Sequence record: MK250017.1
Strand: one strand, 5' to 3'
Length of the DNA stretch: 64,000 nt
Positions 4,270 to 57,891 of this stretch are shown here, piece after piece (the first letter of the stretch is position 1; each line of letters begins with the position of its first letter). The translations under genes were made by a program, and so were the position numbers. The notes under the pieces were generated by a model. That model ran no database searches, was not told where the DNA came from, and saw nothing but the letters and a program-made list of their open reading frames with translations.

Positions 4270-5003
4270 AGTCATATATAATTTATTTTAAACTTATCTA
4301 TTAAACTTTCAATTCTATACAAAATTTCAAAAGTACTTGAATAATACTCAGTCTAATAGAAATATCATTATCTAATTTTAATTATAATAGATATAAATTA
4401 AAAAATAATTTTTAATATCTATCTTTAACTTAATACTATATATTAATTATACTACAATATTTATAAAAAGTTTATATTTACTAATAAATTTTAAAAAATA
4501 ATTTAATAAATAAAAAATATTTACATTTCCGAAAGACTTACCTTACTAAATTCATTAAATTATTAAAAATTATAAATAAATTTTTTCATATATTTATATA
4601 TAGATCTATCACAANNNNNNNNNNNNNNNNNNNNNNNNNNNNTGAGTTCTGAGAAAAAGTCTACATTTTTTCTAAATATTTTTAATGAATTCTAAAAATA
4701 ATTCATAACTAATTAATATTCAATAAATTAAATAAAATATTTTTCATATAATTTTCATATAAATTAATATAAAATAAAAATTCAGATCTAAATTAATATA
4801 AATTTAAATCTGAATTAAAAATTAAATTTTTTATATACTATATATAATATCTATCTCAANNNNNNNNNNNNNNNNNNNNNNNNNNNNNNNNNNNNNNNNN
4901 NNNNNNNNNNNNNNNNNNNNTTATTTTTTAACTATTTTTAATGATATTTTTTTAAACTTTACAAATAATATCTAATATAACTATAGAAAATTAATTTAAT
5001 TTA
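4270..5003. other. very AT-rich non-coding divergence region with two N-gaps and a hairpin
   Basis: No credible ORF; lies between divergent genes; AATTCAGATCTAAATT / AATTTAAATCTGAATT near 4779-4816 pairs at 15 of 16 positions. Confidence 0.5.
4954..4981 (+). promoter_or_regulatory. putative middle-class promoter (AAAC-N18-TATAAC)
   Basis: AAACTTT 4954 and TATAAC 4976; same 22-nt offset as more than 10 other sites. Confidence 0.5.
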
Positions 5004-5543
5004 ATGGATATGGATTTTAATACTAAAGTATAGTTTACGAGAACACGTAATGTAAAGATGCCTAATAGAGCAAATAAGCATGATGCAGGTACAGATTTTT
5101 TTGTACCTTATTATAATTAGGAGTTTCTTGTTGATTTGATTAAGAAGAATACAGGTAATAAGATTTTCTATAAGATTGAGAATGATGATTTGTTTATCAC
5201 TATTCCGGCTGGTGAACAGGTAATGATTCCATCAGGAATTAAGGTATGGATTAATGATAAGAGAACATATCTTCAGGCAACTAATAAGTCTGGTGTTGCT
5301 TCAAAATATCATCTTGATGTTATGGCAAATACGATTGATGCAGATTATCAGGGAGAAGTTCATATTAATCTTTGTAACAATGGTAATACAGATATTACAG
5401 TTCAGACTGGTCAGAAACTTGTACAGTTTATTCATCAGATTTATCTTGATACTGATTGGGTTGAAATGGATGAGAAAGAATATGATGAGATTGAAGCATC
5501 AGACAGAGGTGATGGAATGGCAGGTTCTACCGGAACATTCTAA
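5004..5543 (+). CDS. dut: trimeric dUTPase (179 aa, TAG at codons 10 and 39)
   Basis: Read-through restores motif 1 (HDAGTDF); TNKSG, ANTIDADYQGEV, QKLVQF, RGDGMAGSTG follow. Confidence 0.92.
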
Positions 5544-5580
5544 AAAAATAAAATATATTTAAGAATATGAATTTAAGAAT

Positions 5581-6102
5581 ATGAATAAGCTACGTAATTT
5601 CGAGTTTGAATATAATGGAGAAAAATATTGGTATTCACGTTCTATAACAGTTGCAACTTGTATTTTCTGTAAGGATTCAGACGGAAATTGGTGTGCATTA
5701 ATTAATAAAAGAGGTAAAGGTTGTCCGACTGCTGTTGGAAAGTGGAATGTGCCTGCAGGATATTTGGATCATGATGAAGATATATGTTCATGCGGTATGA
5801 GAGAAACATATGAAGAAACTGGTCTTATTATTCCACGGGTATTAATGAATTTTTACGCAATTAATTCAGTTCCAGATACAAAACGACAAAATGTAAATGT
5901 AATATATTATGTTGTTCTTCCTGGTGTTATTGATGATTATCAGTTAACAACTGAACATTCAGAACCAGATGAAGTAGATGATATAATGTTTATACCAATA
6001 TCAATGATATTTACATCTGATATACAAATTGCATTTAATAATGATAATATTTTATTGGACGTATATAATAAGATTATCATTAATCATAATAAAAGTAAGT
6101 AA
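5581..6102 (+). CDS. Nudix hydrolase (173 aa)
   Basis: Nudix box GYLDHDEDICSCGMRETYEETGL. Confidence 0.9.
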   Translation: MNKLRNFEFEYNGEKYWYSRSITVATCIFCKDSDGNWCALINKRGKGCPTAVGKWNVPAGYLDHDEDICSCGMRETYEETGLIIPRVLMNFYAINSVPDTKRQNVNVIYYVVLPGVIDDYQLTTEHSEPDEVDDIMFIPISMIFTSDIQIAFNNDNILLDVYNKIIINHNKSK

Positions 6103-6163
6103 TTTTTTATCCTTGAATTATTTTATAATAGTTCAAGGATTTTTTATTATAAATTATTTAATG

Positions 6164-6171
6164 TATCTTTG
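6164..6171 (+). promoter_or_regulatory. Bacteroidota-type -7 element TATCTTTG (putative early promoter)
   Basis: Matches TAnnTTTG; same 8-mer at 8966, 9361, 28988, 39359, each upstream of a small TAG-free gene. Confidence 0.65.
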
Positions 6172-6234
6172 TAAAAGTAAACAAAATAGTTTTTTAACAT
6201 TATAATAGTTTATAATGAATATAAAATAATTATC

Positions 6235-6627
6235 ATGGGACTTAAATTTAAAAATCAAAATCCAATTTCTGATAATAATACATTAAAAGTATATTTCTGT
6301 ACAGAGGATGTACATAATGATCCGGATGATGCATGGTCAGATGAACTTATTACTATAGTATATCATATTGCTGCAACAACGGTAGATGAAGCTGTTGATC
6401 TTTGGGTTGAAAAATATTCTGATATTACATGGAAAGATAAAACAAGAGAGGATTTTAACAGACAAGATTATTGGGATGCATGGATAGATCATAACAGGGA
6501 AAAAACTTATAATGTATACTTAAATAAAATTTTAAAATTAAAAAGGAAACTGAGTAAATCAATGGTTGAAATTCCTGGTATTTTCCATATTGGTAAGCCT
6601 TGTGTACTTTTAAAATCAAAATTATGA
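6235..6627 (+). CDS. hypothetical protein (130 aa)
   Basis: ATG-TGA ORF downstream of TATCTTTG. Confidence 0.7.
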   Translation: MGLKFKNQNPISDNNTLKVYFCTEDVHNDPDDAWSDELITIVYHIAATTVDEAVDLWVEKYSDITWKDKTREDFNRQDYWDAWIDHNREKTYNVYLNKILKLKRKLSKSMVEIPGIFHIGKPCVLLKSKL

Positions 6628-7019
6628 AACTAAAAATTAATATAGAAAAATATTCAAACTATTCATCAGATGCTGATAAGGAAGTTAGCACGAAGGAAAT
6701 TGAATTTGATGATAAAATGTTTGATGAAATAACAAGACCTTTAAAAACAAAAAAGAAAGTTAAGAAATGTTTATGGTGTGCAACATTTGATGATAGACTT
6801 ATTGTGAATTATAAAGGTAAACATACATATACAAGTGAAAAGAAACTTTATAATGGTATTATAGCAAATTTCGAACAGTTATTTAAATATTATAAGATAG
6901 ATGATTATAAATATGAACCATTAACTTATATTCAATATGATTTTAAAGAATTGTTAGATAGACTTTTGAAAGAAAACAGAATAAAGTTTCATAGTATTGT
7001 TTTAGAATCAATTGAATAA
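6624..7019 (+). CDS. hypothetical protein (131 aa)
   Basis: ATG at 6624 overlaps the upstream TGA (ATGA). Confidence 0.7.
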   Translation: MKLKINIEKYSNYSSDADKEVSTKEIEFDDKMFDEITRPLKTKKKVKKCLWCATFDDRLIVNYKGKHTYTSEKKLYNGIIANFEQLFKYYKIDDYKYEPLTYIQYDFKELLDRLLKENRIKFHSIVLESIE

Positions 7020-7716: not shown

Positions 7717-7744
7717 AAACTTTTTAAATGATATTCAATATTAT
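7717..7744 (+). promoter_or_regulatory. putative middle-class promoter
   Basis: AAACTTT 7717 and TATTAT 7739 upstream of ompA. Confidence 0.5.
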
Positions 7745-7826: not shown

Positions 7827-8876
7827 ATGAAGAAGTTTATTTTTATGCTTATTGCAATGTTTACATTTGCAATTGGTTCAATTAACGCACAGACACAGAA
7901 TGACTATGCAGGTTCTAGTAAGTTTACTGATAATGTTTCAGTAACACTTCAGGGTGGTGTTCTTACATCATTTGATAATTTTTATAGTGGTCATACTGCA
8001 ATGGCACCTATTGTTTTGATTGGCGCAGATAAGTATGTAACCCCTTGGTTGGGATTTGGTGTAGAAGGTCGTACACTTATTGGTACAGGTCATGGTAGTT
8101 ATAATACATATACTGCTTTTGATTATGTTAATGTAAGTGGTCTTGTAAAGGTTAATCTTGCTAATGCATTTAAGTTTGATGGAACACGTAAGTTCTTTGA
8201 GCCTGTTGTTTATACAGGTCTTGGTTGGGGACATCAGACAGCAAGTTATGGAGATAATCACAATAATTGGATGACTTATCGTGCAGGTGCAGAGTTTAAT
8301 TTTAATCTTGGTGAGGATCGTGCATGGGGTATTGTTGTAAATCCATCAGTTGTTTGGAATGACATTGACAATGGTAAGCTTGTAAAGAAGAACGGTAGTT
8401 TTGAGATTACAGCAGGTGTTGTTTATCGTTTCAAGAATTCAAATGGAAAGCGTTCATTTGCTAAGGCACATCTTTATGATGCAGCAGAGGTTGCAGCTCT
8501 TAACAAGAAGATTAATGAGCTTGAATCACGTGAACCTGTTGTAATTGAGAAGATTGTAGAGAAGCCTGTTGCAACTAATACTGTTGCAGGTGTTGGCTCA
8601 AATGTGTTTATTGCTCCATTTAAGTTTAATAGTTCTGAGCTTTCTGATAAGTGTAAGTCAGTACTTGATAATATTGCAGAGGGCACAACAGTTGTAATTG
8701 ATGCATATGCATCTTCTGAGCCAAAGAGTTCTGCAAAGTATAATACAAAGCTTTCTGTAGAGCGTGCAAATGCAGTTAAGAAGTATCTTGAGTCACGTGG
8801 CGTTAAGGTAACAGATACCACTGGACATGGTATAGATGATGATTTTGGTCGTGTTGCTATTGTTACTGTAAAGTAA
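7827..8876 (+). CDS. ompA: Bacteroidota-type OmpA family outer membrane protein (349 aa)
   Basis: Signal peptide MKKFIFMLIAMFTFAIGSINA; amphipathic beta-strands ending AGVVYRF; compact OmpA_C domain YASSE...YNTKLSVERANAVKKYL. Confidence 0.85.
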   Translation: MKKFIFMLIAMFTFAIGSINAQTQNDYAGSSKFTDNVSVTLQGGVLTSFDNFYSGHTAMAPIVLIGADKYVTPWLGFGVEGRTLIGTGHGSYNTYTAFDYVNVSGLVKVNLANAFKFDGTRKFFEPVVYTGLGWGHQTASYGDNHNNWMTYRAGAEFNFNLGEDRAWGIVVNPSVVWNDIDNGKLVKKNGSFEITAGVVYRFKNSNGKRSFAKAHLYDAAEVAALNKKINELESREPVVIEKIVEKPVATNTVAGVGSNVFIAPFKFNSSELSDKCKSVLDNIAEGTTVVIDAYASSEPKSSAKYNTKLSVERANAVKKYLESRGVKVTDTTGHGIDDDFGRVAIVTVK

Positions 8877-10565: not shown

Positions 10566-10775
10566 ATGATTAACATTAATGATTTAACAGATAACGAAAA
10601 ATATATTTTTACACAAGGTTATGAACAGGGACAAAAAGAAAGTCTTGAAAATTATGATAATATTGAAAAGATTATAGATGCATATCTTGTAGTAAAACAT
10701 GAATGTCAAAATAAAGATTTCATGGAAAGACATGACTTTATTTCACTTGTTATCGATAAGACAAAACAAATTTAA
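10566..10775 (+). CDS. hypothetical protein (69 aa)
   Basis: ATG 10566 within track ORF 10512-10775. Confidence 0.6.
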   Translation: MININDLTDNEKYIFTQGYEQGQKESLENYDNIEKIIDAYLVVKHECQNKDFMERHDFISLVIDKTKQI

Positions 10776-10813
10776 GTTAATATAAATTATAGAATTAAAA
10801 TAAAAGATATATT

Positions 10814-12079
10814 ATGCCTATTATTTAGAAAACAAAGTATTCATATAATGATTTGACTATTGAGCCTGCAGTAATTAGTTCAATTAAGAGTAGGAAGGAA
10901 TGTGATCCATATGAGCGTATGGATGTAAATATGAGAGATTATCTTCCGTTGTTTACTGCACCAATGTCTACTATTGCAAATGAACATAATTTTAATATAT
11001 GGAAGAAGAATAAAATTATGCCTATGTTGCCACGAAATATTGGTGCTGATCCAAATGGAAGTATTGATAAACGAATTAGTTATATCAAAGATTTTCTTGA
11101 TAATGGTGATTGGGTTGCGTTGTCACTTAAGGAATTTGAATATGTTTTTGTAGAACATAAGATGATGAGTCCTGGACAAATCTTTCCTGGTTATAATCGA
11201 ACATATAGAGTATGTGTAGATTTGGCTAATGGTCATATGGAATGTCTATATGATACAATTAATAAAGCGAAGGAAATTGCAAGAAATGACAATTATAAAC
11301 TTATTGTAATGACAGGAAATATTGCAAATTCTGAAACATATAGATGGATTTGCAAACATGCTGAAGTTGATTATATTAGATTGTCTGTGGGAAGTGGATC
11401 AAATTGTATTACGGCTACGCAGACCTCTGTTCATTATCCTATTGCATCATTAATTGATGAATGTAAGTATATAAAGAATGTATACGAAGGTAAATCTTAT
11501 GCTAAATCAACACCTTATATTATTGCTGATGGTGGTGTTAGAGGATATGCAGATGTTATTAAGGCTATTGCTCTTGGTGCAGATTATGTAATGATTGGTA
11601 GTTTGTTTACAGGATTACTTGAATCTGCTGCACCTCTTGATATTGAGTGTTATAATTCACATTATAAGTATGGATATGCAGCAGGTATTATTAATGATGG
11701 TATTAATAATATTCTTAATCTTTGGGATAGTCTTGAAGATGAAGATGATAATGATACATTAGTACCAATTGATAATAAAGAATTGGAGCAGAAGAAGAAA
11801 GATTTCATTAAGGATATGAAAGATATTGTAAAGGAATCTTATGGTATGTCTACAAAGAAGGCTCAGAAGTTGATTAATCCAAATGCAAAGTCAAAGACTT
11901 CTGAAGGATGTACGAAGTATATTCATGTAAAGGAAACTGTTAAGCAGTGGTCAGATAATATGATAGATTATTTCAGGTCAGCAATGAGTTATACAAATAA
12001 GAAATATATTAATGATTTCAGAGGAAAAGTAGATCTGATTATTAATAGTTCATCTGCAATTCTTGCAGTAAATAAGTAA
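10814..12079 (+). CDS. IMP dehydrogenase / GMP reductase family enzyme (421 aa, TAG at codon 5)
   Basis: MPII-TAG-KTKYSYNDLTIEP restores the N-terminal YxDxxIxP motif; catalytic loop GSGSNCIT; IIADGG; ALGADYVMIGS; YGMST; SEG. Confidence 0.85.
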
Positions 12080-18900: not shown

Positions 18901-18936
18901 ATGAGACTTAAAGTCAGACTTAAGTCTCATTTTTTT
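18901..18936 (+). terminator. intrinsic terminator
   Basis: ATGAGACTTAA / TTAAGTCTCAT followed by T-run. Confidence 0.85.
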
Positions 18937-18982
18937 ATATAAACTCTAAACAAACAGTGTTTAATTTTAACATAAGAGTATT

Positions 18983-19633
18983 ATGGATCAAATTACAAAA
19001 GAAAGAAATAAACAAGAGTTTATAGAGTTATTGAGAAGTACAAAAAGAGAAGGTATTGAAGATTTAATTAACTGGTTATCAGAGAAGTCTGATTTCTTTG
19101 AAGCTCCATCATCTACAATTTACCATTGTAATTATCCTGGAGGTCTTTGCCAACATTCACTTAACGTTTATTATGCAGCACGAGACTTCTATGAGACTTA
19201 TAAGAAACTATCTCTGCCAGAGAAAAATGTAGAGTCTATCCCAATGGAATCTATTATCATAACTGCACTTCTTCATGATTTATGTAAAGCAAATAACTAT
19301 AAGATTGTTGAGAAGTTTAAGAAAGATGAATCAAACCAATGGTTCAAATACTATTCATATCAGATTGATGAAAAACTTCCACTCGGTCATGCTCCTAAAT
19401 CTATTTTTATTGCACAAACATTTATCAGACTTTCAGGTGAAGAATTATGCGCGATTATGTGGCATATGGGAATGTCAGATATTGGTGCATGGATGAGTAA
19501 TTACCAAAAACCTTCTATGCAAACATCATATACAAAAGTTCCACTTTCTGTATTAATTATGCAAGCAGACTTTTTCGCTTCATACTGTATGGAAAAAGAA
19601 GTAGATCAAACTGTTGAATGCAGAATTGGTTAA
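18983..19633 (+). CDS. HD-domain phosphohydrolase, YhaM-like (216 aa)
   Basis: EAPSS.IYH.NYPGGL.QHSLNV, LLHDLCK, GH, WHMG. Confidence 0.85.
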   Translation: MDQITKERNKQEFIELLRSTKREGIEDLINWLSEKSDFFEAPSSTIYHCNYPGGLCQHSLNVYYAARDFYETYKKLSLPEKNVESIPMESIIITALLHDLCKANNYKIVEKFKKDESNQWFKYYSYQIDEKLPLGHAPKSIFIAQTFIRLSGEELCAIMWHMGMSDIGAWMSNYQKPSMQTSYTKVPLSVLIMQADFFASYCMEKEVDQTVECRIG

Positions 19634-19637: not shown

Positions 19638-19676
19638 AAAAGAGAGATTAAATTGTTGATATTTAATCTCTCTTTT
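19638..19676. terminator. bidirectional terminator between convergent genes
   Basis: Perfect 16-bp inverted repeat AAAAGAGAGATTAAAT. Confidence 0.8.
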
Positions 19677-21318
19677 TATATATTAAATATGGTGAATAAC
19701 ATTTTAAATAATCTTCCCTAATATCATCTTTATTACAATTTAGAAATTCTTTTAACATACTTTTATTAAATCTAAATTCACTACGTTTATAATTATAATA
19801 ATTTAATGTAAATTTAATTTTATCTGATTCTAATTTAAAATTTAATGTTTCATATAATTTTATATTATCAGTTTCTAAATTACAATTAACAATAATAGAA
19901 TTATAAGTATAATTACATTTAAAATAATTTAATAATAGTTTTTCACAACCTATCACATATAAATTATTTTTATAACAAATTCTATTTAATATATAATTAT
20001 TATCTGATATATTACTAAATGTCATACAACATAATAATTCATTATTCTTAAATAATCCTAATTTTATATCAGACTCAATATAATTATCAATATGATAAGT
20101 ATTTATAAAATCTTTACATATATTTTCATCTAATTCTTTAATGATACAATTATCTGAAAATACTTTCTGCTCAAGATGACAACTTCTTAATATAATATTT
20201 TCTATTTTATCTATATTATAATGAATATCATCTTCCCTAAATGTCAACATCTATATATCAGTTTTAGATACTAAATCATATTTTACTTTAAATCTATTCT
20301 TACCATTAATTCCACAATGCCAATAAATTCCATTACATTCTATTGCAACTTTATAATCAGGTAAATAAAAATCAAATTCACGCGGTGATATTATATATCT
20401 AACATGTTGTTCAAACTTTATATTATGTTTCTCCAATAATAATCTTATTTTATATTCTATAGACGTCTCTAAATTTTTTTCTGGATTACATATAGGACAC
20501 ATAACAATATCTTTCTACTATCTATTAAAAAATGTATAATTCTTTATTGAAAATGGATTATGTATTTTACATTGATTATAAACTATAAATTCATTTTTAT
20601 TATCTGAATATTTAATTTCATAACCACGTTTTAACCATTTATTTTCTATTGTTTTATGTTTATTAACTAATTTCTATTTAACATTATTTTCATTCTTATT
20701 CGCACATTCATTAGAACAATAATGTCTAAACCCTTCACTGAATCTATAAAACTTAACATATTTTCCACATGTAGGACATACAGGACTTTTATTAATATGA
20801 TTCTTCATTCGATATAAAATCTCCTGTATAACTGATTTATTCCTCTATAAATCATCATACCTATTCATCATGTAATCATATATACCAAATTGCTTTAACT
20901 TTTTATTTTTACAATATTCAGATATTAATCTGTCATCTTTAATCATTAAATTCAATACATATTCATCATCAATATTTTCTTTCTACTTTACATCAGTTAA
21001 TTTATGTATTTTATTCGGATCATTTAATGAACATTTATATGAACAATATTGATTATAACCATATAAAAATCCTCTGAATAATAAAGGAATCTCTTTACCA
21101 CATGTTTTACAATATAAATGTAAATCATCTGGTAATTTATAATATATCCTATATATGATTTCCTGTATATTTTTTACAGATTTAAATCTATTCATTAAAT
21201 AATCATATAAACCATGATCTTTTAACCATGATTCTTTTATTCTACATGTATTTAATTGAATTTTATTGTTTCTAAATACTGTTAATTTATCTATTATAAT
21301 CTGATCTGCCACTTCCAT
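19663..21318 (-). CDS. free-standing Hef/Vsr-like homing endonuclease (about 551 aa, TAG-rich)
   Basis: Track ORFs 20983, 20251, 19663 share one frame via 6 TAGs (including TAG-TAG); two CxxCG...YCSxxC repeats, CPICN, catalytic EFDFYLPDYKVAIECNGIYWH; start 21318 or 21360. Confidence 0.72.
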
Positions 21319-21354
21319 ATTTTTTATATTAATAAATGTTAAAAATGTTTTAAT

Positions 21355-21382
21355 AAACAAATAACATATTTTACTATATAAT
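21355..21382 (+). promoter_or_regulatory. putative middle-class promoter for the polB-IntN gene
   Basis: AAACAAA 21355 and TATAAT 21377. Confidence 0.6.
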
Positions 21383-23339: not shown

Positions 23340-23578
23340 TACCATATCAATCTAAAATAACTATTATAAGAAACAGTAATTTTAAAAAGCATAATACATT
23401 ATTAAATACTTTTTTGAAATTGATAGGAAGTAATTATCGTGATTTATATTATGCATTAAATCATGATTTGAATTGTATTACGATAAATGACAGATCAGAG
23501 ATAAATGATAATCAAATTATATATGCGAAATATTTAGGTATTGACATTATTGATGAATCACTTAAGAGAATTAGTTAA
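23336..23578 (+). CDS. small protein with BRCT-like C-terminus (80 aa)
   Basis: ATGA overlap with the upstream gene; YAKYLGIDIIDES resembles the BRCT KAxxLGIxIIxE helix. Confidence 0.45.
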   Translation: MIPYQSKITIIRNSNFKKHNTLLNTFLKLIGSNYRDLYYALNHDLNCITINDRSEINDNQIIYAKYLGIDIIDESLKRIS

Positions 23579-23618
23579 ATAGTATTATCGTGAAAAGTAT
23601 TTCAATGAAGAAAATAAT

Positions 23619-23646
23619 AAACTAATATTACAATATATTATATAAA
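23619..23646 (+). promoter_or_regulatory. putative middle-class promoter for the IntC-polB gene
   Basis: AAACTAA 23619 and TATAAA 23641, same 22-nt offset. Confidence 0.55.
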
Positions 23647-23669
23647 ATATATAATTAACAAAAGAAAAG

Positions 23670-25549: not shown

Positions 25550-25580
25550 CACGCAGTTAATATCCTTTTCTTATTTAATA

Positions 25581-25608
25581 AAACTTTTAATTTATTATCG
25601 TATATAAT
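25581..25608 (+). promoter_or_regulatory. putative middle-class promoter
   Basis: AAACTTT 25581 and TATAAT 25603. Confidence 0.6.
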
Positions 25609-25641
25609 ATTTGTAACAGAATTTTAATTAAACTTTAAATA

Positions 25642-27564: not shown

Positions 27565-27584
27565 ATAAAATAAAAACATATAAT

Positions 27585-27833: not shown

Positions 27834-27869
27834 AACGAGAATTATTAATAATAAAATAAGTTAGAAATT

Positions 27870-28325
27870 ATGATGGAATCTGTTATTGCAATCAGTGTAG
27901 GTTTCTTTATTATGATGTGTATTATTATAAAGTTTATAGTAATTAATAATATTCATGATATTCCTGATATTGTAGATAATACAGATGATGATATTTAGAA
28001 TACCTTGAAATAGGATGTTCAATATAAGAGTGTATAGGATGTTGATGGCATAGATGATGTATCTATTAATAGTATTGATGTAAATATTGATACTGATATT
28101 ATTAATCATGATTTAACATTTAATAATAATGATGAGACCTCTGATGATATACAATAGTTAATGCTTTTAATAGAACCTATAGAAGATAATATTAAACAAG
28201 TTTCTGAGAATAATAGTAATATATTCCCAGAAACTTTTCGTATATTAAATTTTAGTGCAAAACATGAAAAAGAAATAGATTTATCAGGTACTACTTTAAT
28301 TTCATTAAGATCTATTAAACAATAA
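27870..28325 (+). CDS. membrane-anchored acidic protein (151 aa, 4 TAGs; absent from track)
   Basis: Open only with TAG as sense; TM segment VIAISVGFFIMMCIIIKFIVI then D/N-rich tail; TAA 28323. Confidence 0.6.
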
Positions 28326-28374
28326 TAGTAATTTTTTGTATAATATTTAAATGAAAATCTAATTGAAATTAAAT

Positions 28375-30551: not shown

Positions 30552-30611
30552 AATATAAACTTTATTGTAATTTTATAATAAAATATACATAATAAATTAA
30601 TTCAATTTTTA

Positions 30612-31637: not shown

Positions 31638-31665
31638 AAACTTTTTAATTAAATTCAACTATAAT
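31638..31665 (+). promoter_or_regulatory. putative middle-class promoter
   Basis: AAACTTT 31638 and TATAAT 31660. Confidence 0.6.
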
Positions 31666-35253: not shown

Positions 35254-35281
35254 AAACTTTAATACTTTTATCTACTATAAA
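35254..35281 (+). promoter_or_regulatory. putative middle-class promoter
   Basis: AAACTTT 35254 and TATAAA 35276. Confidence 0.55.
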
Positions 35282-36803: not shown

Positions 36804-36869
36804 TAAACATTTTTTAATTTTTATTATATAATTAATATACTAAAAATATCAAACATTATAAAAAGCAAT

Positions 36870-41042: not shown

Positions 41043-41091
41043 TATAAACAAATAGTTACCTAACGAATATAATATAAAAATAATTTTATAT

Positions 41092-43965: not shown

Positions 43966-44058
43966 AAAAATAAATTGAAATAATATAGACTTTATTTAAA
44001 TTATAGAGTAATATATTTACAATTAAGTTAATCAAATAACAAATAAAGAAAATAATTT

Positions 44059-44499
44059 ATGTCAAAAAATAAATTTATTAAGCTTCATTCAAAAGAAGAT
44101 AATAGTGTTATTATTGCAAGAATTTCAAAGATTAGTCTTGTAACTACAGATAATGATTATTCTGGTAAAATGACAACTGTATATTTTGATGATGAAAATA
44201 TTGATTCAATTACAGTTAATGAAACACCAGAGAAGATTTATCAAAATATTGTAGAGTTGGATAATACAGATTTTTTGAAACTTCATTCAAGTGATGATAA
44301 TGCAGTTATGATTGTAAACACAGAGATTATTTCTGTTATTTCACAATCAGAAGAGGATGGAAAGAATGTAACTACAATGTATTTCAATAATGAATCTATT
44401 GAATCAGCTTCATTTAATGAATCTCCTGAACGTATTTATAAGATGATGGAGATTACTAATAATGATGTGGTTACATCAGATAATAATGAAACTAAGTAA
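44059..44499 (+). CDS. protein with two tandem ~65-aa repeats, FlbD-like (146 aa)
   Basis: FIKLHSKEDN...TTVYFDDENIDSITVNETPEKIY repeated as FLKLHSSDDN...TTMYFNNESIESASFNESPERIY. Confidence 0.65.
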   Translation: MSKNKFIKLHSKEDNSVIIARISKISLVTTDNDYSGKMTTVYFDDENIDSITVNETPEKIYQNIVELDNTDFLKLHSSDDNAVMIVNTEIISVISQSEEDGKNVTTMYFNNESIESASFNESPERIYKMMEITNNDVVTSDNNETK

Positions 44500-45132: not shown

Positions 45133-45160
45133 AAACAATTAACATATATTTGAGTATAAT
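45133..45160 (+). promoter_or_regulatory. putative middle-class promoter
   Basis: AAACAAT 45133 and TATAAT 45155. Confidence 0.6.
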
Positions 45161-45188: not shown

Positions 45189-47228
45189 ATGCAAAAAGGT
45201 AATATTGGAGTTACTAGTTAGGATATTTTTCCATTAATCAAGAAATTTATGTATAATGATCAGGATATTTTTATCCGTGAGATCGTAAGTAATGCAGTTG
45301 ACGCATCAGAGAAGTTAATTAAAGTTATTAGTGCAAATGAGTATACAGCAAATCCAGATGATTTAAAAGTTACAGTTACTATTAATCATGAAGATAATAC
45401 TATTACTGTTTCTGATATGGGTATTGGTATGACTGCTGATGAAATAGAAAAGTACATTAATCAGATTGCATTTTCAGGAGCAAATGACTTCTTAGAGAAA
45501 TATAAGGATACACAGATTATTGGTCATTTTGGACTTGGATTTTATTCAAGCTTTATGGTAAGTTCAAAAGTTGAAATTGTATCAAAGTCATATAAAGAGA
45601 ATTCAAAAGCATGTAGATGGACATGTGAAGGAACTACAGAGTTTACACTTAAGGATGATGATAAAGAATCTGTAGGTACCGATGTAATTATGCATATTTC
45701 TGATGAATATAAGGAGTATGTAAATGAAAGTAAACTTATGGAACTTTTAAAGAAGTACGCAGAATATTTACCTATTCAAATTTATCTTAAAGATGTTCCT
45801 GCACCAACTACTGATTCATCTACCGGTGAAGTTACATATCCAGAATCACATGAAACAAAAATTACACGAGATGAACCATTGTGGTTAAAATCTGCATCAG
45901 AACTTAAAGATGAAGATTATATTAAGTTCTATAAGGAAACATTCCCTAATAGACCTGAACCACTTTTCTGGATTCATATTAATATTGATACACCGTTTAC
46001 ATTTAAGGGAATTCTTTATTTCCCTGCATTTGATCAGAAACATCCTATTTTTGAGCGTAAGCATCTTAATTTGTATTGTAATCGTGTATTTGTGACAGAT
46101 GATGTAGATGGAGTATTACCAGATTATTTGAGTCTTCTTCATGGTGTAATTGACTCTCCTGATATTCCATTGAATGTTTCTCGTTCAGTTCTTCAAAATG
46201 ATGCTAATGTTAAGAAGATTAGTTCACATATTACAAATAAGGTTATGAGTTCACTTCGTACACTTATGAAGAAAGATAGAGAAACATATGAGAAAAAGTG
46301 GGAAACAATTAAAACCTTCATTAATCTAGGCGTTGTAACAGAACCTAATATTTTTGATAAAGCAAAGGATATTATTCTTCTTGTTGATACTGATAATAAG
46401 ATGTATACTTTTGATGAATATTATGATAAAGTATCAGAAACACAGAAAGATAAAGATGGTAAAATTGTATATTTGTATACATATGATACTGCTACACAAT
46501 ATACTTATATCGATGCTTTAAAGAAATACGGTTATAATATTCTGCTGTTTAATAGTCAATATGGAGCATTTGAAGTACATACATTTGAAATGAAATTACA
46601 AGAAAAGAATGTAACATTTAAACGTATTGATGCAGATGTACCAGAAAACCTTATTAAGAAAGAAGAAGATACAACAAAGAAAGAAAAACCTGTATCTGAG
46701 AATATCAAGAGTATGTTGGTATCTATGTTTGATTGTATTGAGCTAAATCTTCCTAAAATTACACATCAGTATATTGTTCAGCAAGATGGTAAAGATGCAC
46801 TGCCTATTACTATTGTTGCAGATGAGTTCTTCCGTCGTATGAAGGAAATGTCAATGCTTAATAATGCTGGTATGTATTTGGAAAATAATGCATCTATTAA
46901 GATTATTATTAATGCAGATTCTAAAGTTGTAAAGAAGATTATTAAGATTGCAGAAAAAGAAATTGGTCAGCAAATTAATGATATTAATGAAAAAGTTAAA
47001 GATATTAATACAAGATTGGAAGCTGCTGATACAGATGATGCAAAGAATTCTATTAAAAAAGAACTTGATAACATTATTGCAGAGAAAAAGGAAATTATTA
47101 ATAAACATGCACATGCAGATAGTCATATTCATGAATTAATTGATATTGGTTTGTTACAGTATGGTTTATTATCAGGTGAAGATTTGGCAGCATTTGTTAA
47201 GAGATCTATAAAGATGATTGAAAAGTAA
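45189..47228 (+). CDS. htpG: Hsp90 chaperone HtpG, Bacteroidota type (679 aa, single TAG at codon 11)
   Basis: MQKGNIGVTS-TAG-DIFPLIKKFMY...REIVSNAVDA; DMGIGM; GHFGLGFYS; IDSPDIPLNVSRS. Confidence 0.95.
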
Positions 47229-47353
47229 TTCAATATATAAAAGAGAGTATGTTTTGTAAATAACTACTCTCTTTTTACTTTTTACAAAAGTAGACAAATA
47301 ATAAATATTAATATATAAGAAATATATTAACAAATTAAAATTAAATTAACAAA

Positions 47354-47614
47354 ATGTATCGGTATCATAATCCCTTAAAGAATTTTAATCCATTTGTGAT
47401 AACAAGTGTATTTGTATTATTTTTAATTGTAATGTTTACATTTGCAATTCCTACATTGATAAATGCAGCATCTACAATGATGAATTTTGTTGCCATTATT
47501 TTTATTTTATTTACAATTTATATATGTATTATTGTAATGAGATATTATAATGATTATTATATACGACATTATCAGAAATACAAGGAAGAAAGAGAAAAGA
47601 AAATTAAAGATTAA
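47354..47614 (+). CDS. two-TM membrane protein (86 aa)
   Basis: Two hydrophobic helices and basic tail. Confidence 0.65.
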   Translation: MYRYHNPLKNFNPFVITSVFVLFLIVMFTFAIPTLINAASTMMNFVAIIFILFTIYICIIVMRYYNDYYIRHYQKYKEEREKKIKD

Positions 47615-49672: not shown

Positions 49673-49796
49673 TTTTTATATTTTAATCTCTAATAATTTT
49701 CATAATTATTAGAGATTTTTTATTTTTATAAAGTAAACAAAAAGTTGTTTATCTAATAATATATATAGATTAAATAACTTTTAAATATAATTAATT

Positions 49797-49991
49797 ATGG
49801 ATTTTACAATTAAAGGAAATAATAATGAAGTATCAGTTTCTAAGGATACTATTAAGAAGTTGATAGAGCTTTTACAGCATGTAGATTGTACATGTGTATG
49901 GTCAGAACATGATAATCAATATATTAAGGTTAATGATATTCCTAATAATATTGTTGATGAACTTATTGTAAAATTGAAATTATCAAAATAA
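49797..49991 (+). CDS. hypothetical protein (64 aa)
   Basis: ATG-TAA; AAACAAA 49735 / TAATAT 49757 upstream. Confidence 0.6.
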   Translation: MDFTIKGNNNEVSVSKDTIKKLIELLQHVDCTCVWSEHDNQYIKVNDIPNNIVDELIVKLKLSK

Positions 49992-52255: not shown

Positions 52256-52283
52256 AAACTTTATTAGCATTTTTTTGTATAAT
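52256..52283 (+). promoter_or_regulatory. putative middle-class promoter
   Basis: AAACTTT 52256 and TATAAT 52278 upstream of nrdD. Confidence 0.6.
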
Positions 52284-52361: not shown

Positions 52362-55300
52362 ATGAAGGTAACAAAACGTGATGGTAGTTTTGAGAATTAT
52401 AGTGTTTAGACAGTTAAACGTGCAGTTAGAGAAGCGTTTAAGTCAACAAAGACTAAATACTCAAAAGACACAATTTCGAATATTGTAAGTTCTATTACGC
52501 CATATGATGGCATTCCTGTAGAAGAAATACAGGATCAGATAGAAACAAGTTTGTATTCTCATGATCAGCCTAAAGTTGCAAAAGAATTTATTCTTTATCG
52601 CAATAAGAAGAAGGAAATCAGAGAATGGGTTGCTAATAAAGAAGCATTTATTGAAAGATATAAAAATGCATCAAATACTGCAAATAGTACAATTGATGAT
52701 AATTCTAACGTATCATCTAAGAACATCGGTGTATTAAATGCAGAAATTCATAAAGGTGATAATATTCTTGTAAGTAGAGGAATGATTACAAGAAAGTTAA
52801 AAGATTTATTCCCTGATTTTAAAGCAAAACAATATCAAAAAGATTTAAAAAATCATATTATCTATAAGAATGATGAATCAAGTTTTGCTGGTGCTATAAG
52901 TCCTTATTGTGTTAGTGTATCTATGTATCCATTTCTTAATCATGGATTGGAAAAGATTGGAGGTTTATCATGCCATCCACAAAATCTTGATTCCTATTGT
53001 GGTATGTATGTAAATCTTGTATTTGCAGTTGCAGCACAATTTGCAGGAGCAGTAGCAACATCAGAATTCTTGGTATATTTTGATTATTTTGCACGAAAGG
53101 AATTTGGAGATGATTACTATTTGCATAGTAAAGAATTCTATAAGATTGGTCCAAAATATCGTAAGTTACTTAATGAATCTAATTACTGGTGTAAAGATGT
53201 AGATACACTTAGAAAACATGATTTTGGTACAGATGAATTAAATAAATTGAGAGATGAACTTGTTTATAATTCAGAACGACCATTATCTGATGAAGAACTT
53301 AAAGAATATGAAACAGAACTTTCTAAATATGATGTAGAAGGTTCAATAAAAGATTTTACAAATCCTATTAAGATTGGTGATGGTACAAGAACTATTGGTT
53401 CATGTATACAACAATTCTTCCAACAAGTAGTGTATTCAATTAACCAACCCGCGGCAAGTCGTGGTCTGCAATCTGCATTTGTAAATTTCTCTTATTTTGA
53501 TAAGCCTTTCTTTGAAGGTATGTTTGGGGAATTTGTATTTCCAGATGAAGAAGGTACAAGACCTTGTTGGGAAAGTGTTTCATGGTTGCAGAAAGATTTT
53601 ATGATTTGGTTTAATAAAGAGCGCCTTCGTACTATAATCACTTTCCCTGTTGAAAGTTTTGCATTGGTATATAAGGATGGAAAGTTTGTAGATGAAGATT
53701 CTGCAGATTTTGTTGCAGAAGAATATTCTCGTGGTCATTCATTCTTTACTTATATGTCAGATACTGTTGATTCATTATCAAGCTGCTGTTTCGATGGTGA
53801 TACACCATTTATGTTTGTAGAACCTCTTAATATGGAAGAGCATGGTGGTAATAATGCATATATGGTTTCAACTATTAAAGATGCATATGAAAAATATAAA
53901 GATGATATAATTAATGTATATCATATGAATTTTAATGGTACTACAGGTAAATGTACAGGTGAATGGGTAAATGCAAAATTTGTAAAAGCACAAGCTATTC
54001 AGGAAGTACGAATTTATTTTAAACCAGATGATTTCAATCCAGATGAGTCAAGGAATGTAATGAGAGTTACGCCGGATCATATATTCCCTGTTATTGATGA
54101 TAATGGATTTATTACAGATAAAAATGCATATTTGTTACAGACTGGAGATCAACTTATTTTTGAATATGCACAATATATGGGATTATTTAGAGATGAATTC
54201 CCTGATAGAGATCAAGATTTAGTAAAACGTGCTATTTCAAAAGTTGAAATTGTAAATCTTGATGAACCAAAGGATTATTATTGTGTAGAGTTATGTGATA
54301 AAAATATTGAACCATACTTTTTGTTACCTAATGGAAATATTACACATAACTGTCGCCTTAAGAATAAGATTCAAACAAAGGAATTTAATTTTACAAATGG
54401 TAACTTAGGGATCAACTTGGGTCCTTTATGTGCTTAATTGCTAATCAAGCAATGTATTAATATAGCGATATTAATGCATCGGTGAAGCCTAAACATAAGT
54501 TGTGAAACTATATGCATGGTAATACCGAACCAAGTTAATAAATATGTTATAATTTTACATTTATAATATATGAATAATAAAATATTTACAATTTACAAAA
54601 TATCATTTCCAAATGGAAAAGTATATATTGGTTAGACATATCATTATCATTAGAGAATTAAAGAACATTTAAATGAAATGAAACATAGTGATTATAAATT
54701 ATATAGAGCTATGAGGAAATATAATATAAATGAAAATAATTTTTCTATAGTAGAAGAAAATATTTTAACATAGAACGATGCAGATAATAAAGAAATATAT
54801 TATATCAATTTATATGATAGTTATAATAATGGATATAATTCTACATTAGGTGGACATGCTGCAACAATAACAAAAATAGGAGAAGAACATCCTAAAGCTA
54901 TATTAAATGATAATGAATTATTAGAATTAAGAAAAATTAGATATTCTATGAAATATACATTTGGAGAAGTATATGATATGTATAAAAATAAAATGTCAAA
55001 AAGTGGTTTTTCAAAATATTGGCATTATTATACAAGACCTGAAATCGGAGAAGAATATAATACTGATGAAGTAAATAAATTTTATAAATCTGATAGGAGA
55101 ACAAGAAGAGGTATATTACATGCAAATTCAAGAAATTTATCAGATGAAGAAGTTTTAAATATAAGAATACGATATTTTGTAAATGGTGAAAAAGAAGATG
55201 ATATTTTTAAAAAATATAAACACTTATATTCAAAGAGTGGTTTTAATAAAATATTATTTGGATAGTCATATATGCATGTAAAAATGCCTATTAAAACAGA

Positions 55301-56546: not shown

Positions 56547-56572
56547 GTTTTTATAACCTATTTTATTTTTAA
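56530..56572 (+). repeat. 43-bp direct repeat, copy 1 (nrdD 3' end and stop)
   Basis: ATAGTGAAAATATTTAAGTTTTTATAACCTATTTTATTTTTAA, identical at 57723-57765. Confidence 0.95.
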
Positions 56573-56610
56573 TAAGTTATAACATATACTTTATGTTATA
56601 ACTTATTTTT
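56571..56610 (+). terminator. intrinsic terminator after nrdD
   Basis: AATAAGTTATAACATA / TATGTTATAACTTATT followed by T-run. Confidence 0.75.
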
Positions 56611-56677
56611 ATTTAATAGTATTAAAGGTTTATCCTATTATTCAATTAGATAAATATTATAAATGAAAATATAATAT

Positions 56678-57739
56678 ATGAATTATAATAAAATTTATAA
56701 TAATATTATTAATAATGCAAAAAATCGAAATAATATAAACAATCAATACTTTGAAATACATCATATTATCCCTAAATGTATAGGAGGAACTGATGATGAT
56801 AAAAATTTAGTAAAACTTACATTACGTGAACATTTTATATGTCATGAATTATTAGTTAAAATATATCCAGATATACAATCATTAAAATGCGCATTATGGA
56901 TTATTTGTATTACGACATTAGAAGCAAAAAAAGAATATATAACAAATAATATAAAATATAAAAATAATAAATTACCTATTAATCATAGAGTACAACATTT
57001 TTTAAATGATTTTGAAAAACATATTAATATATCTTCAAGAGATTATGAATATTGTAGAACATTATATTATATAGCAACAAAAGGGAAAAAACGAACTGTT
57101 GAGCAATGTAAAAAAATTTCAGATGCGACAAAGCATGCTATGAAAGATCCATCTAGAGTACAATTAAGAAGAAAAGGTGTATTGGGTAGTAAATTTTATT
57201 ATGATTTAATAACAAATAAATCTTATAAATGGTTTCCGGGAGATCCAGATATTGATTTAAATAAGTATGCGTGGGGTAGAGGAAAGAAAATGAGTTTAAA
57301 ATCAAAAACATTAATGTCTGAAAATTTATCAAAATATAAAAAAGTATATTATTATAATGATAATTTAAAATCATCTACATGCTTTTGTAAAGATTAGATA
57401 AAAATATTACCTGATAGTTGGCATTTAGGAAGAAAATTCGGCGGATATAATAAAATGAAAATATTTATTATACCATTATTAAGAAATGTACATTTTAAAT
57501 TAGTATGTAATTAGCATTTTATTGATAATATATTTTATCATATTAATTTATTAAACAAATAGGAAATAAGTATAGGTATATTAACGATTAATGAAAAAAT
57601 ATTAAGTGACTTAATACAAAAAAATATTGATATTAATGATGAAAAATATATTACAATAATATATAACAATATATTAAATAATATAAACCAAATTAAAACT
57701 ATTAATAATAGCGTTTATTTAAATAGTGAAAATATTTAA
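56678..57739 (+). CDS. free-standing HNH homing endonuclease, T4 Mob-like (353 aa, 3 TAGs)
   Basis: EIHHIIPKCIGGTDDDKNLVKLTLREHFICH; ATAAATA 56650 upstream; ends VYLNSENI-TAA inside repeat copy 2. Confidence 0.85.
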
Positions 57740-57765
57740 GTTTTTATAACCTATTTTATTTTTAA
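57723..57765 (+). repeat. 43-bp direct repeat, copy 2 (end of the HNH gene)
   Basis: Identical to 56530-56572. Confidence 0.95.
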
Positions 57766-57770
57766 ATTTT

Positions 57771-57806
57771 AATGATTCCAGTATACTACTACTGGAATCA
57801 TTTTTT
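57771..57806 (+). terminator. intrinsic terminator
   Basis: AATGATTCCAGT / ACTGGAATCATT followed by T-run. Confidence 0.8.
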
Positions 57807-57891
57807 ATTGATTTTTTCTAATAAAAATAGATGTTTTAATCAACTTTTTATATGTTTTTCTATATAATTTTTAAGAAAAAGATTAAATAGT

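What the first reader, a model, noticed from the sequence alone, without database searches (positions are those of the whole stretch)
4954..57868. Unrecognised bipartite promoter motif: AAAC exactly 22 nt before a TAWAAT-like box
Seen (AAAC start / box start): 4954/4976, 7717/7739, 21355/21377, 23619/23641, 25581/25603, 30557/30579, 31638/31660, 35254/35276, 36805/36827, 45133/45155, 49735/49757, 52256/52278, and 57841/57863 (CAAC variant). All are intergenic and precede replication, metabolism or host-like genes with no or mostly 5'-located TAG. It does not match the Bacteroidota TTTG/TAnnTTTG promoter. Inference: a middle-type promoter read by a phage sigma factor or a MotA-like activator. 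The invariant spacing argues against chance despite the AT-rich background.
Basis: partly seen in the sequence, partly recalled or inferred. Interest (0 to 1): 0.72.

Follow-up and report, generated by a model that had tools for sequence, protein, structure and literature searches.

The report
Lak megaphage middle-type promoter motif
The repeated AAAC-plus-TATAAT signal is real: it is a promoter class of the uncultivated Prevotella megaphage Lak, not described in the papers searched. It is probably read by a sigma factor that the phage itself encodes, and it sits between an early and a late promoter class.

Summary
The window is a 64-kb stretch of Prevotella megaphage Lak (A/C type; 26% GC; TAG partly read as Gln). 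All 13 listed sites are as described and intergenic.

- **Enrichment:** AAAC-N18-TAWAAT occurs 17 times against 3.3 expected. 16 sites lie on the + strand at spacer 18, against 0-4 at every other spacer.
- **Refined motif:** t-A-R-A-C-w-w-T, 18 nt from C to box, then r-TATAA-w. In window noncoding DNA: 15 observed, 1.1 expected. In the Lak-B1 genome: 101 noncoding sites, against 7-20 at other spacers.
- **Position:** sites lie about 50-65 nt before start codons and also before tRNA genes.
- **Conservation:** both boxes and the exact spacing are kept between Lak-A/C and Lak-B while the spacer sequence drifts.

This class sits between two others. An early-type class carries the host Bacteroidota TAnnTTTG box (98% of its genes TAG-free). 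A T4-late-like AATAAATA class has 28% TAG-free genes. This class has 62%.

Lak shows no RNA-polymerase beta/beta' Pfam domains and no MotA or AsiA. It encodes three sigma factors. The best candidate reader is an ECF-like sigma (closest solved relative B. subtilis SigW), whose own gene carries the motif. No transcription start data could be obtained. This is a new member of a known kind, of moderate interest.

The parts
4954..4981 (+). class-2 promoter-like site AAAC-N18-TATAAC; ATG of the dUTPase-like gene (5004-5543, 2 in-frame TAG) at +50
   Evidence: (conserved in Lak-B1 with N18)
6179..6206 (+). AAAC-N18-TATAAT, in tandem with an early-type GTATCTTTG box at 6163; ORF 6235-6627 at +56
   Evidence: motif not kept in Lak-B1
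7717..7744 (+). AAAC-N18-TATTAT; OmpA-domain gene 7827-8876 at +110
   Evidence: conserved
10759..10786 (+). AGAC-N18-TATAAA; IMPDH/GMP-reductase-like gene 10814-12079 at +55 (TAG at codon 5)
   Evidence: conserved, N18 kept
18916..18943 (+). AGAC-N18-TATAAA before HD-domain gene 18983-19633 (+67); doubtful, because the AGAC lies in a hairpin followed by a T-run
   Evidence: no ortholog alignment
21355..21382 (+). AAAC-N18-TATAAT; N-terminal part of family-B DNA polymerase (21415-22221) at +60
   Evidence: conserved
23619..23646 (+). AAAC-N18-TATAAA; C-terminal part of family-B DNA polymerase (23670-24644) at +51
   Evidence: motif absent at the Lak-B1 ortholog
25581..25608 (+). AAAC-N18-TATAAT; M13 peptidase gene 25642-27564 at +61
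   Evidence: no Lak-B1 ortholog region found
28317..28344 (+). AAAC-N18-TATAAT; DUF3310 gene 28375-28935 (4 TAG) at +58
   Evidence: conserved; compensating indels keep N18
30557..30584 (+). AAAC-N18-TAAAAT; gene 30612-31634 (1 TAG, Gln in Lak-B1) at +55
31638..31665 (+). AAAC-N18-TATAAT; gene 31702-32580 at +64
   Evidence: conserved; spacer diverged, N18 kept
35254..35281 (+). AAAC-N18-TATAAA; DnaB-like helicase gene, probably 35307-36803 (+53), running across the N gap 35340-35363
36805..36832 (+). AAAC-N18-TATAAT; gene 36870-37361 (1 TAG) at +65
41046..41073 (+). AAAC-N18-TATAAT; metallophosphoesterase gene 41092-41895 at +46
   Evidence: conserved
43987..44014 (+). AGAC-N18-TAATAT; gene 44059-44499 at +72
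   Evidence: TAGACTTTAT and N18 kept in Lak-B1
45133..45160 (+). AAAC-N18-TATAAT; HSP90-like gene 45189-47228 (TAG at codon 11) at +56
47292..47319 (+). AGAC-N18-TATAAG; ORF 47354-47614 at +62
   Evidence: conserved, N18 kept
49735..49762 (+). AAAC-N18-TAATAT; ORF 49797-49991 at +62
   Evidence: conserved
52256..52283 (+). AAAC-N18-TATAAT (AGAC in Lak-B1); anaerobic ribonucleotide reductase gene 52362-54437 (TAG at codon 16) at +106
57841..57868 (+). CAAC-N18-TATAAT (TAAC in Lak-B1); gene 57892-58599 at +51
4446..4473 (-). AAAC-N18-TATAAT on the minus strand, upstream of the zinc-ribbon protein gene 3450-4268(-)
   Evidence: not kept in Lak-B1
1007..1034 (-). AGAC-N18-TATAAT on the minus strand; TAG-rich ORF starting at 978 (+56) and running off the window start
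   Evidence: AAAC in Lak-B1, N18 kept

Best explanation
The sites are a phage-specific promoter class of the Lak megaphages, here called class 2 or middle-type. It has two parts. The -35-type element is t-A-R-A-C-w-w-T. The -10-type element is r-T-A-T-A-A-w, which starts exactly 18 nt after the C. The predicted start of transcription is about 32-34 nt after the first A, which leaves a 15-30 nt leader.

Proposed mechanism:
1. Host Prevotella RNA polymerase with its own sigma-A reads the early class (tGTGTATCTTTG, which contains the Bacteroidota TAnnTTTG box).
2. One early operon carries the gene of a phage ECF-like sigma factor (regions 2 and 4 only).
3. This sigma binds host core polymerase and reads the ARAC/TATAA promoters, including one in front of its own gene.
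4. That turns on replication, nucleotide-metabolism, chaperone and tRNA genes, and the gene of the gp55-like late sigma.
5. The gp55-like sigma then reads the AATAAATA late class.

Shown here:
- the motif, its strict spacing, its position and orientation relative to genes, and its conservation;
- the three motif classes and their TAG gradient;
- the sigma gene inventory and the motif in front of two sigma genes.

Inferred:
- that the sites fire as promoters;
- their timing;
- which sigma reads them.

The stated confidence is for the whole statement. That the motif is a promoter read through a phage-encoded sigma of either type is about 0.75.
For: Motif statistics:
- Window.
- Lak-B1 genome: ARAC-N18-TATAA gives 101 noncoding sites at spacer 18, against 7-20 at spacers 12-25. 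Matches in coding DNA show no spacer preference.

Position:
- ARAC lies mostly 50-65 nt before ATG.
- Sites are dense in the tRNA array, for example 47 nt before tRNA-Ile and 67 nt before tRNA-Glu.

Conservation between the window and Lak-B1:
- Identity is 0.96 in the two cores, 0.33-0.83 in the spacer and 0.57 in the flanks.
- N18 is kept in about 17 ortholog pairs, some through compensating indels.

TAG gradient (share of downstream genes that are TAG-free):

| Class | TAG-free |
|---|---|
| 1 (early-type) | 47/48 |
| 2 (this finding) | 47/76 |
| 3 (late-type) | 27/96 |

No Rpb1 or Rpb2 polymerase domains were found.

Evidence for the ECF-like sigma:
- It has Pfam regions r2 + r4_2. Its best solved relative is B. 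subtilis SigW, E 2.9e-12.
- The SigW -35 element is TGAAACnTTT (PMC6713349). ECF promoters typically have an AAC motif, a T-tract next to the -35 element, and autoregulation (PMC5758882). The Lak element ARACwwTt matches this register.
- Counting 16 nt after the C also puts rTA where SigW promoters have CGTA. That SigW spacing is from my own knowledge.
- The residues at SigW T168 and K170 (K170 reads the G opposite the C) are kept. R175, which reads G-35, is Lys in Lak, where the base is T.
- AGAC-N18-TATAA lies 41-42 nt before the sigma's ATG in both Lak-A1 and Lak-B1, and an AAAC version lies 30 nt before it in two relatives at 46-49% identity.
- The recognition helix NESTVKNYLY(K/R)GK is invariant down to 36% identity.
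- The motif is enriched around the gene in relatives: 41 at spacer 18, against 8-22 at other spacers.
- Outsiders with a different helix lack the motif.

The gp55-like sigma gene has a class-2 site 57 nt upstream.
Against: - No transcription start or expression data. The RNA runs are held as contigs only, and their ends do not line up with the sites.
- The -10 box TATAA(T) looks like a group 1-3 sigma box, not the CGT-type box usual for ECF sigmas.
- The phage also has an RpoD-like sigma with regions 1.2-4.
- The motif in front of the ECF-like sigma gene is missing in four of eight relatives.
- The two most distant loci with the same recognition helix (41-42% identity) show no enrichment in 20 kb. 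One site there has a 17-nt spacer.
- In three distant relatives (41-49% identity) the ECF-like sigma gene itself contains TAG.
- Five window sites are not kept in Lak-B1: 6179, 8992 (a weak site, not listed among the parts), 23619 and 4473(-) have lost the motif there, and 25581 has no orthologous region.
Confidence: 0.5

Rival explanations
1. The same promoters are read by the phage RpoD-like sigma (337 aa, regions 1.2, 2, 3 and 4) bound to host core polymerase. TATAAT would be a classical -10 element, and TAAACT a variant -35 hexamer with a 17-nt spacer.
For: - The box is TATAAT-like, with the second base A at 97% in the EM model. It is mostly TATAAT in relatives.
- If the -35 hexamer is taken as TAAACT, the spacer is 17 nt.
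- The sigma is a clear group 1-3 type. Its best solved relatives are RpoD, RpoS and SigA, E 1e-25 to 1e-20, and phrog_351.
- The residues that read -12 in E. coli sigma-70 are altered (Q437 to R, T440 to M, by alignment to the conserved YATWWIRQ block; numbering from my own knowledge), so a novel specificity is plausible.
Against: - The spacer is strictly invariant. Spacers 17 and 19 are at background (10 and 12 against 101), unlike the 17 +/- 1 tolerance usual for sigma-70-type promoters.
- The sixth base of the box (T-7, normally near-invariant) is T 55 / A 40 in Lak-B1.
- In Lak-A2 the gene carries four in-frame TAG codons. In both clades it follows a hairpin plus T-run and a late-type GATAAATA box. 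That points to late expression, whereas many class-2 genes are TAG-free replication genes.
- Its own gene has no good class-2 site.
Confidence: 0.22
2. Host sigma-A polymerase reads the sites with help from a phage DNA-binding activator that sits on ARAC. This would be sigma appropriation in the manner of T4 MotA/AsiA.
For: - Lak belongs to the T4-like core group, which lacks its own polymerase (PMC7824862).
- In T4 the middle class works this way.
- The TA of the box could serve as the start of a degenerate host -7 element.
Against: - No MotCF or AsiA domain scores above cut-off in Lak-A1 or Lak-B1.
- The host -7 consensus TAnnTTTG (PMC9723704) is absent from class 2: after TATAA come W, A, W, with no TTTG. 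It is perfectly present in class 1.
- The upstream block has the form of an ECF -35 element, with AAC and a T-tract.
Confidence: 0.1
3. The motif is not a promoter. It could instead be a binding site for a repressor or a replication or packaging protein, a dispersed repeat, or a side effect of AT-rich intergenic composition.
For: - There is no direct evidence of transcription starts.
- The genome is 26% GC, so TATAA-like words are common: 3108 TATAAT in Lak-B1.
Against: - 14-fold enrichment over dinucleotide-matched intergenic shuffles.
- A single sharp spacer.
- Orientation with the downstream gene and a fixed distance to ATG.
- Presence before tRNA genes.
- Spacers differ between sites, so it is not a repeat family.
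- Only the two blocks are conserved between clades.
Confidence: 0.06

Closest known systems
Promoters of phage-encoded sigma factors in phiEco32-like phages (Salmonella phage 7-11 gp47, bipartite GTAAtg-(16)-aCTA; phiEco32 gp36) (PMC8948821)
   Same: - A lytic phase without its own polymerase encodes a sigma-family protein that redirects host core polymerase.
- The target is a bipartite, phage-specific promoter with a fixed spacer, placed before non-early genes.
- Early genes use the host primary sigma.
   Different: - The sequences of both boxes differ.
- The Lak sigma has a roughly 100-residue N-terminal extension.
- Lak has three sigma genes and three motif classes.
- The host is a Bacteroidota bacterium whose own promoters are of the TAnnTTTG type.
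- Nothing has been tested biochemically for Lak.
ECF (group 4) sigma promoters, especially B. subtilis SigW (TGAAACnTTT ... CGTA) and E. coli SigE (GGAACTT) (PMC6713349, PMC5758882)
   Same: - An AAC-type -35 element with the C invariant.
- A T-rich stretch right after the -35 element.
- A rigid spacer.
- A promoter copy in front of the sigma gene.
- The Lak sigma has regions 2 and 4 only and is closest to SigW among solved structures.
   Different: - The -10 element is rTATAA(w) instead of CGT-type.
- The base before AAAC is T, not G, which matches an Arg-to-Lys change at the SigW R175 position.
- No anti-sigma partner was identified.
- The regulon is a phage developmental class, not a stress regulon.
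T4 middle promoters (MotA box at -30 plus sigma-70 -10 element; need MotA and AsiA)
   Same: - The same place in a three-step programme of a T4-like phage.
- They serve replication, nucleotide-metabolism and tRNA genes and the late sigma gene.
   Different: - No MotA box.
- No MotA or AsiA homologue.
- The likely mechanism is sigma replacement rather than sigma appropriation.
Bacteroidota sigma-A promoters (-7 TAnnTTTG, -33 TTTG) (PMC9723704)
   Same: Both lie upstream of genes with short leaders. The Lak early-type class (tGTGTATCTTTG) does carry this box.
   Different: Class 2 has no TTTG after the TA and has ARAC upstream. The two classes are separate sets of sites that serve genes with different TAG content.

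Membership tests
ECF sigma-dependent promoter | Conserved AAC motif in the -35 region | tested here: met
   ARAC, with C invariant by definition of the search. AAAC (63) and AGAC (38) are the only variants enriched at spacer 18. The C and the preceding A are 100% kept between orthologs.
ECF sigma-dependent promoter | T-rich tract directly downstream of the -35 element (-30 to -26) | tested here: met
   Positions +4 to +7 are W, W, T (72/101) and T (58/101), with almost no G or C. Positions 4-8 are at least 0.92 identical between orthologs.
ECF sigma-dependent promoter | Rigid spacer length | tested here: met
   101 sites at spacer 18, against 10 at 17 and 12 at 19, which equals background.
ECF sigma-dependent promoter | Group-specific short -10 element, commonly CGT-type | tested here: inconclusive
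   The box is rTATAA(w). In the SigW register, rTA falls where GTA of CGTA lies, but the box as a whole looks like a group 1-3 -10 element.
ECF sigma-dependent promoter | A cognate sigma with regions 2 and 4 only, usually autoregulated from the same promoter type | tested here: inconclusive
   Such a sigma exists. The motif lies before its gene in Lak-A1, Lak-B1 and two relatives, but not in four others.
ECF sigma-dependent promoter | Transcription from the site by the holoenzyme with that sigma | not testable with these tools
   Needs in vitro transcription or a reporter assay.
Classical sigma-70 (group 1) promoter | -35 TTGACA-like hexamer | tested here: not met
   The hexamer in the 17-nt register is TAAACT/TAGACT. 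The TTG part is absent.
Classical sigma-70 (group 1) promoter | -10 TATAAT with near-invariant A(-11) and T(-7) | tested here: inconclusive
   The second base is A at 0.97 in the EM model, but the last base is T 0.57 / A 0.41, or T 55 / A 40. In more distant relatives it is mostly T.
Bacteroidota sigma-A promoter | -7 box TAnnTTTG | tested here: not met
   No TTTG follows the TA in class 2. The box is present instead in the separate class tGTGTATCTTTG.
T4-type middle promoter (MotA/AsiA) | MotA box at -30, and MotA and AsiA encoded by the phage | tested here: not met
   No MotA-box-like sequence. PF09158 and PF09010 give only sub-threshold chance-level hits in Lak-B1 and Lak-A1.
T4-type late promoter (gp55) | Single element TATAAATA at -10 with no upstream element | tested here: not met
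   Class 2 needs ARAC at a fixed distance. A separate AATAAATA class fits the late type and is linked to TAG-rich genes. A gp55-like sigma is present.

The most novel reading that the evidence does not exclude
Lak megaphages may run a cascade of one host sigma and three phage sigmas that is wired to their genetic-code switch.
- Early promoters serve only TAG-free genes.
- The ECF-like sigma class serves tRNA genes and replication genes, many of which carry one or two conserved TAG sense codons close to the 5' end. These would act as translational gates until TAG suppression is on.
- In Lak-A the RpoD-like sigma gene is itself TAG-gated.

Promoter class and codon reassignment would then jointly time the programme.
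Probability: 0.3. Interest if true: 0.72.

Novelty: new member of a known kind. Interest (0 to 1): 0.5.

Why it matters
Lak megaphages are among the largest known phages. They are common in human and animal guts and have never been cultivated. The papers I could search contain no promoter analysis: the word 'promoter' does not occur in Devoto 2019, in the stop-codon recoding preprint, or in the 2024 taxonomy paper.

A sequence-level map of three promoter-like classes would help in four ways:
- It gives a first testable model of the Lak temporal programme.
- It corrects gene starts. Several genes begin about 50-65 nt after the motif and include TAG codons.
- It offers an independent handle on the idea that TAG recoding times late gene expression.
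- It provides orthogonal sigma/promoter pairs that might work in Bacteroidota, where standard promoters fail.

Tried and rejected
- **Whole genome of the window:** not held, so genome-wide work used the related Lak-B1 record (89% protein identity at the HSP90-like gene). I did not list pattern matches in Lak-A1, to avoid seeing letters of the masked stretches.
- **Profile around every TATAAT:** showed nothing, because most copies lie in coding DNA. The same was true for every intergenic TAAAC.
- **First EM run:** it drifted to codon periodicity of the upstream genes. The second run, on noncoding DNA, mixed in late-type sites. The counts I rely on are therefore the regex and spacer scans.
- **RNA evidence:** 22 runs hold Lak-like sequence, but all as assembled contigs. 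Laying four metatranscriptomes on 25400-31399 gave fragmentary contigs of related strains with no consistent ends at the sites. This is no evidence either way.
- **Motif in distant sigma homologue carriers:** not enriched in crAss-like cr6_1 or cr53_1, or in the 635-kb phage LR745206. Their recognition helices differ, so this neither supports nor refutes the assignment.
- **Single-protein scan of viral contigs:** found only close relatives.
- **ARAGORN on Lak-B1:** no CUA-anticodon tRNA, only a tRNA with anticodon TTA. The suppressor question was left open.
- **Bacteroidota bipartite pattern TTTG-N18-22-TAnnTTTG:** almost absent from noncoding DNA (1 of 17). The early-type class has the -7 box but not that -33 spacing.

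Full report
**What the window is.** A 659-aa HSP90-like ORF (45249-47228) is 100% identical to Prevotella phage Lak-A1, Lak-A2 and Lak-C1, and 89% identical to Lak-B. The window is therefore about 64 kb of a roughly 540-kb Lak megaphage. It is 26.5% GC, with three N runs. Genes lie mostly on the + strand. TAG-free ORFs are mixed with ORFs that are open only if TAG is read as a sense codon. Recognisable products include:
- a split family-B DNA polymerase with intein parts;
- a DnaB-like helicase and an anaerobic ribonucleotide reductase;
- dUTPase, an IMPDH/GMP-reductase-like enzyme and a NUDIX protein;
- HSP90, an M13 peptidase, TelA and a CNNM/CBS protein.

**Check of the observation.** All 13 coordinates are as stated and are intergenic.
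- AAAC-N18-TAWAAT has 17 matches against 3.3 +/- 1.65 expected.
- A spacer scan gives 16 + strand hits at 18 nt, and 0-4 at every other spacer from 8 to 29.

The refutation condition 'no enrichment over an AT-matched background' is therefore not met.

**The assembly gap.** The flanks of the gap at 35340-35363 map to Lak-B1 positions 24 nt apart, which equals the 24 N. The ATG at 35307 is in frame with the ORF 35625-36803. The site at 35254 lies upstream of it.

**Refining the motif.** I fetched the whole Lak-B1 genome (548 kb).
- The upstream block is t-A-R-A-C-w-w-T and the box is r-TATAA-w.
- A[AG]AC-N18-TATAA occurs 101 times in noncoding DNA at spacer 18, against 7-20 at spacers 12-25. AAAC accounts for 63 and AGAC for 38. 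The sixth base of the box is T 55 / A 40.
- Matches inside coding DNA show no spacer preference.
- ARAC lies mostly 50-65 nt before the start codon, in the orientation of the gene.
- The window holds about 22 sites.

**Conservation.** In ungapped comparisons anchored on ARAC between the window and Lak-B1:
- identity is 0.96 in the two cores and at least 0.92 at positions 0-8 and 22-27;
- identity is 0.33-0.83 in the spacer and 0.57 in the flanks;
- the 18-nt spacing is kept in about 17 ortholog pairs, in some cases through compensating indels, and AAAC and AGAC interchange between orthologs.

Five sites are not kept in Lak-B1: 6179, 8992 (weak, not in the parts list), 23619 and 4473(-) have lost the motif, and 25581 has no orthologous region.

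**Context: three motif classes.** The strongest intergenic word in Lak-B1 is a different one, tGTGTATCTTTGta, which contains the Bacteroidota -7 box TAnnTTTG (PMC9723704). A third word, AATAAATA, resembles the T4 late promoter TATAAATA (T4 consensus from my own knowledge). It marks the upstream regions of TAG-rich genes, often right after a terminator hairpin.

I took ORFs of at least 60 codons that start at the expected distance and counted the TAG-free ones:

| Class | Motif | TAG-free ORFs |
|---|---|---|
| 1 | tGTGTATCTTTG | 47/48 |
| 2 | ARAC-N18-TATAA (this finding) | 47/76, plus 12 with TAG only in the first quarter |
| 3 | AATAAATA | 27/96 |

Class 2 is thus intermediate. Class-2 sites are also dense inside the tRNA array of Lak-B1, for example 47 nt before tRNA-Ile and 67 nt before tRNA-Glu. 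That argues for a transcription signal rather than a translation signal.

**Gene starts.** For dUTPase, the helicase, HSP90, NrdD and three others, the stretch between the ATG at the modal distance and the first TAG-free ATG is conserved as protein in Lak-B1. It has no indels, and its TAG codons are kept or replaced by Gln or Lys codons. These genes therefore start soon after the motif and carry one or two TAG sense codons near the 5' end.

**Who reads it.**
- Lak-B1 shows no Rpb1 or Rpb2 polymerase domains. This agrees with its placement among T4-like jumbo phages that rely on phage sigma factors (PMC7824862).
- It encodes an RpoD-like sigma (regions 1.2-4), an ECF-like sigma (r2 + r4_2) and a gp55-like late sigma.
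- No MotA DNA-binding domain or AsiA is found in Lak-B1 or Lak-A1.

*For the ECF-like sigma:*
- Its closest solved relative is B. subtilis SigW. The SigW -35 element is TGAAACnTTT. ECF promoters in general have an AAC motif, a T-tract next to the -35 element, a rigid spacer and autoregulation (PMC6713349, PMC5758882). The Lak element fits this register.
- The SigW residue that reads the G opposite the C (K170) is kept. The residue that reads G-35 (R175) is changed, where Lak has T.
- The motif lies 41-42 nt before the sigma gene in Lak-A1 and Lak-B1, with an early-type promoter one gene further up.
- 180 homologues form a family whose recognition helix is invariant down to 36% identity.
- In eight loci of such relatives the motif is again enriched at spacer 18 (41, against 8-22 at other spacers), with ORFs 50-66 nt downstream.
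- Outsiders with another helix lack the motif.

*Against the RpoD-like sigma:*
- It carries four in-frame TAG codons in Lak-A2.
- It follows a terminator plus a late-type box.
- The strict spacer and the weak last base of the box are atypical for such sigmas.

*For the RpoD-like sigma:*
- The TATAAT-like box.

I therefore favour the ECF-like sigma (about 0.5) over the RpoD-like sigma (about 0.2) and an activator with the host sigma (about 0.1).

**What is missing.** There are no transcription start data. Public RNA runs that hold Lak-like sequence are available only as contigs, and their ends are uninformative. Timing is inferred from gene content, from the TAG gradient, and from the class-2 site before the gp55-like sigma gene.

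**Comparison and novelty.** The closest characterised systems are the phage sigma factors of phiEco32-like phages. Phage 7-11 gp47 reads a bipartite GTAAtg-(16)-aCTA promoter (PMC8948821). The next closest are ECF sigma promoters of the SigW/SigE type. The Lak class works like these but has its own sequence and host setting. None of the Lak papers I could search mentions promoters. I rate it a new member of a known kind, with moderate interest.

Noticed in passing
window 6163, 8965, 9360, 28987, 39358 (+ strand); Lak-B1 about 48-55 sites: A second, stronger intergenic motif, tGTGTATCTTTGta, preceded by a T-run about 12 nt upstream. It contains the Bacteroidota -7 box TAnnTTTG and lies 30-60 nt before small ORFs, 98% of which are TAG-free. 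It is probably the early, host sigma-A class. At 6163 and 8965 it stands in tandem with an ARAC/TATAA site.
   Followed up: partly
Lak-B1 genome-wide; window examples upstream of TAG-rich genes: A third motif, AATAAATA(W), like the T4 late promoter TATAAATA. It occurs in 47/87 upstream regions of genes with 3 or more TAG, against 20/235 for TAG-free genes, and often follows a hairpin plus T-run directly. A gp55-like late sigma gene (Lak-B1 402921-403307, 3 TAG) is present.
   Followed up: partly
window 21415-24644: The family-B DNA polymerase is in two ORFs. 21415-22221 ends with an intein N-splicing domain and 23670-24644 begins with an intein C-splicing domain. A TAG-containing ORF (22221-23339) lies between them. 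Each half has its own ARAC/TATAA site in the window, though the second site is absent in Lak-B1. This may be a split intein with trans-splicing.
   Followed up: no
window 5004, 10814, 30612, 35307, 36870, 45189, 52362: Seven genes start at an ATG soon after the motif and carry one or two in-frame TAG codons within about the first 100 codons (most within the first 45), followed by long TAG-free bodies. These 5' stretches are conserved as protein in Lak-B1. The TAG codons could act as translational gates. Code-11 gene calls truncate these genes.
   Followed up: partly
L038:3495-4505 (Lak-A2 MK250019) against Lak-B1 198324-199337(-): The RpoD-like sigma gene has four in-frame TAG codons in Lak-A2 but none in Lak-B1, where two of the aligned residues are Gln. 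In both clades it follows a terminator-like hairpin and a GATAAATA box.
   Followed up: partly
Lak-B1 123000-139000 and 420700-423700; 344976-345048: tRNA arrays of 19 and 8 genes. ARAGORN finds no CUA-anticodon tRNA, but it finds a tRNA with anticodon TTA (called 'Stop') at 344976, about 350 nt after an ARAC/TATAA site, and one tRNA-like gene with a 4-base anticodon at 201404-201478(-).
   Followed up: no
L046, L047, L051 (relatives with 41-49% sigma identity; contigs up to 717 kb): In these distant Lak-like megaphages the ECF-like sigma gene itself needs TAG=Q to be read through. TAG use therefore extends to this regulator in some lineages.
   Followed up: no
window 21347-21382: An ARAC/TATAA-like site on the minus strand (AAAC at 21350, box TATAAA only 4 nt before the ATG of the TAG-containing gene 19663-21318) overlaps back-to-back with the + strand site at 21355. 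It could be a divergent promoter pair or chance.
   Followed up: no
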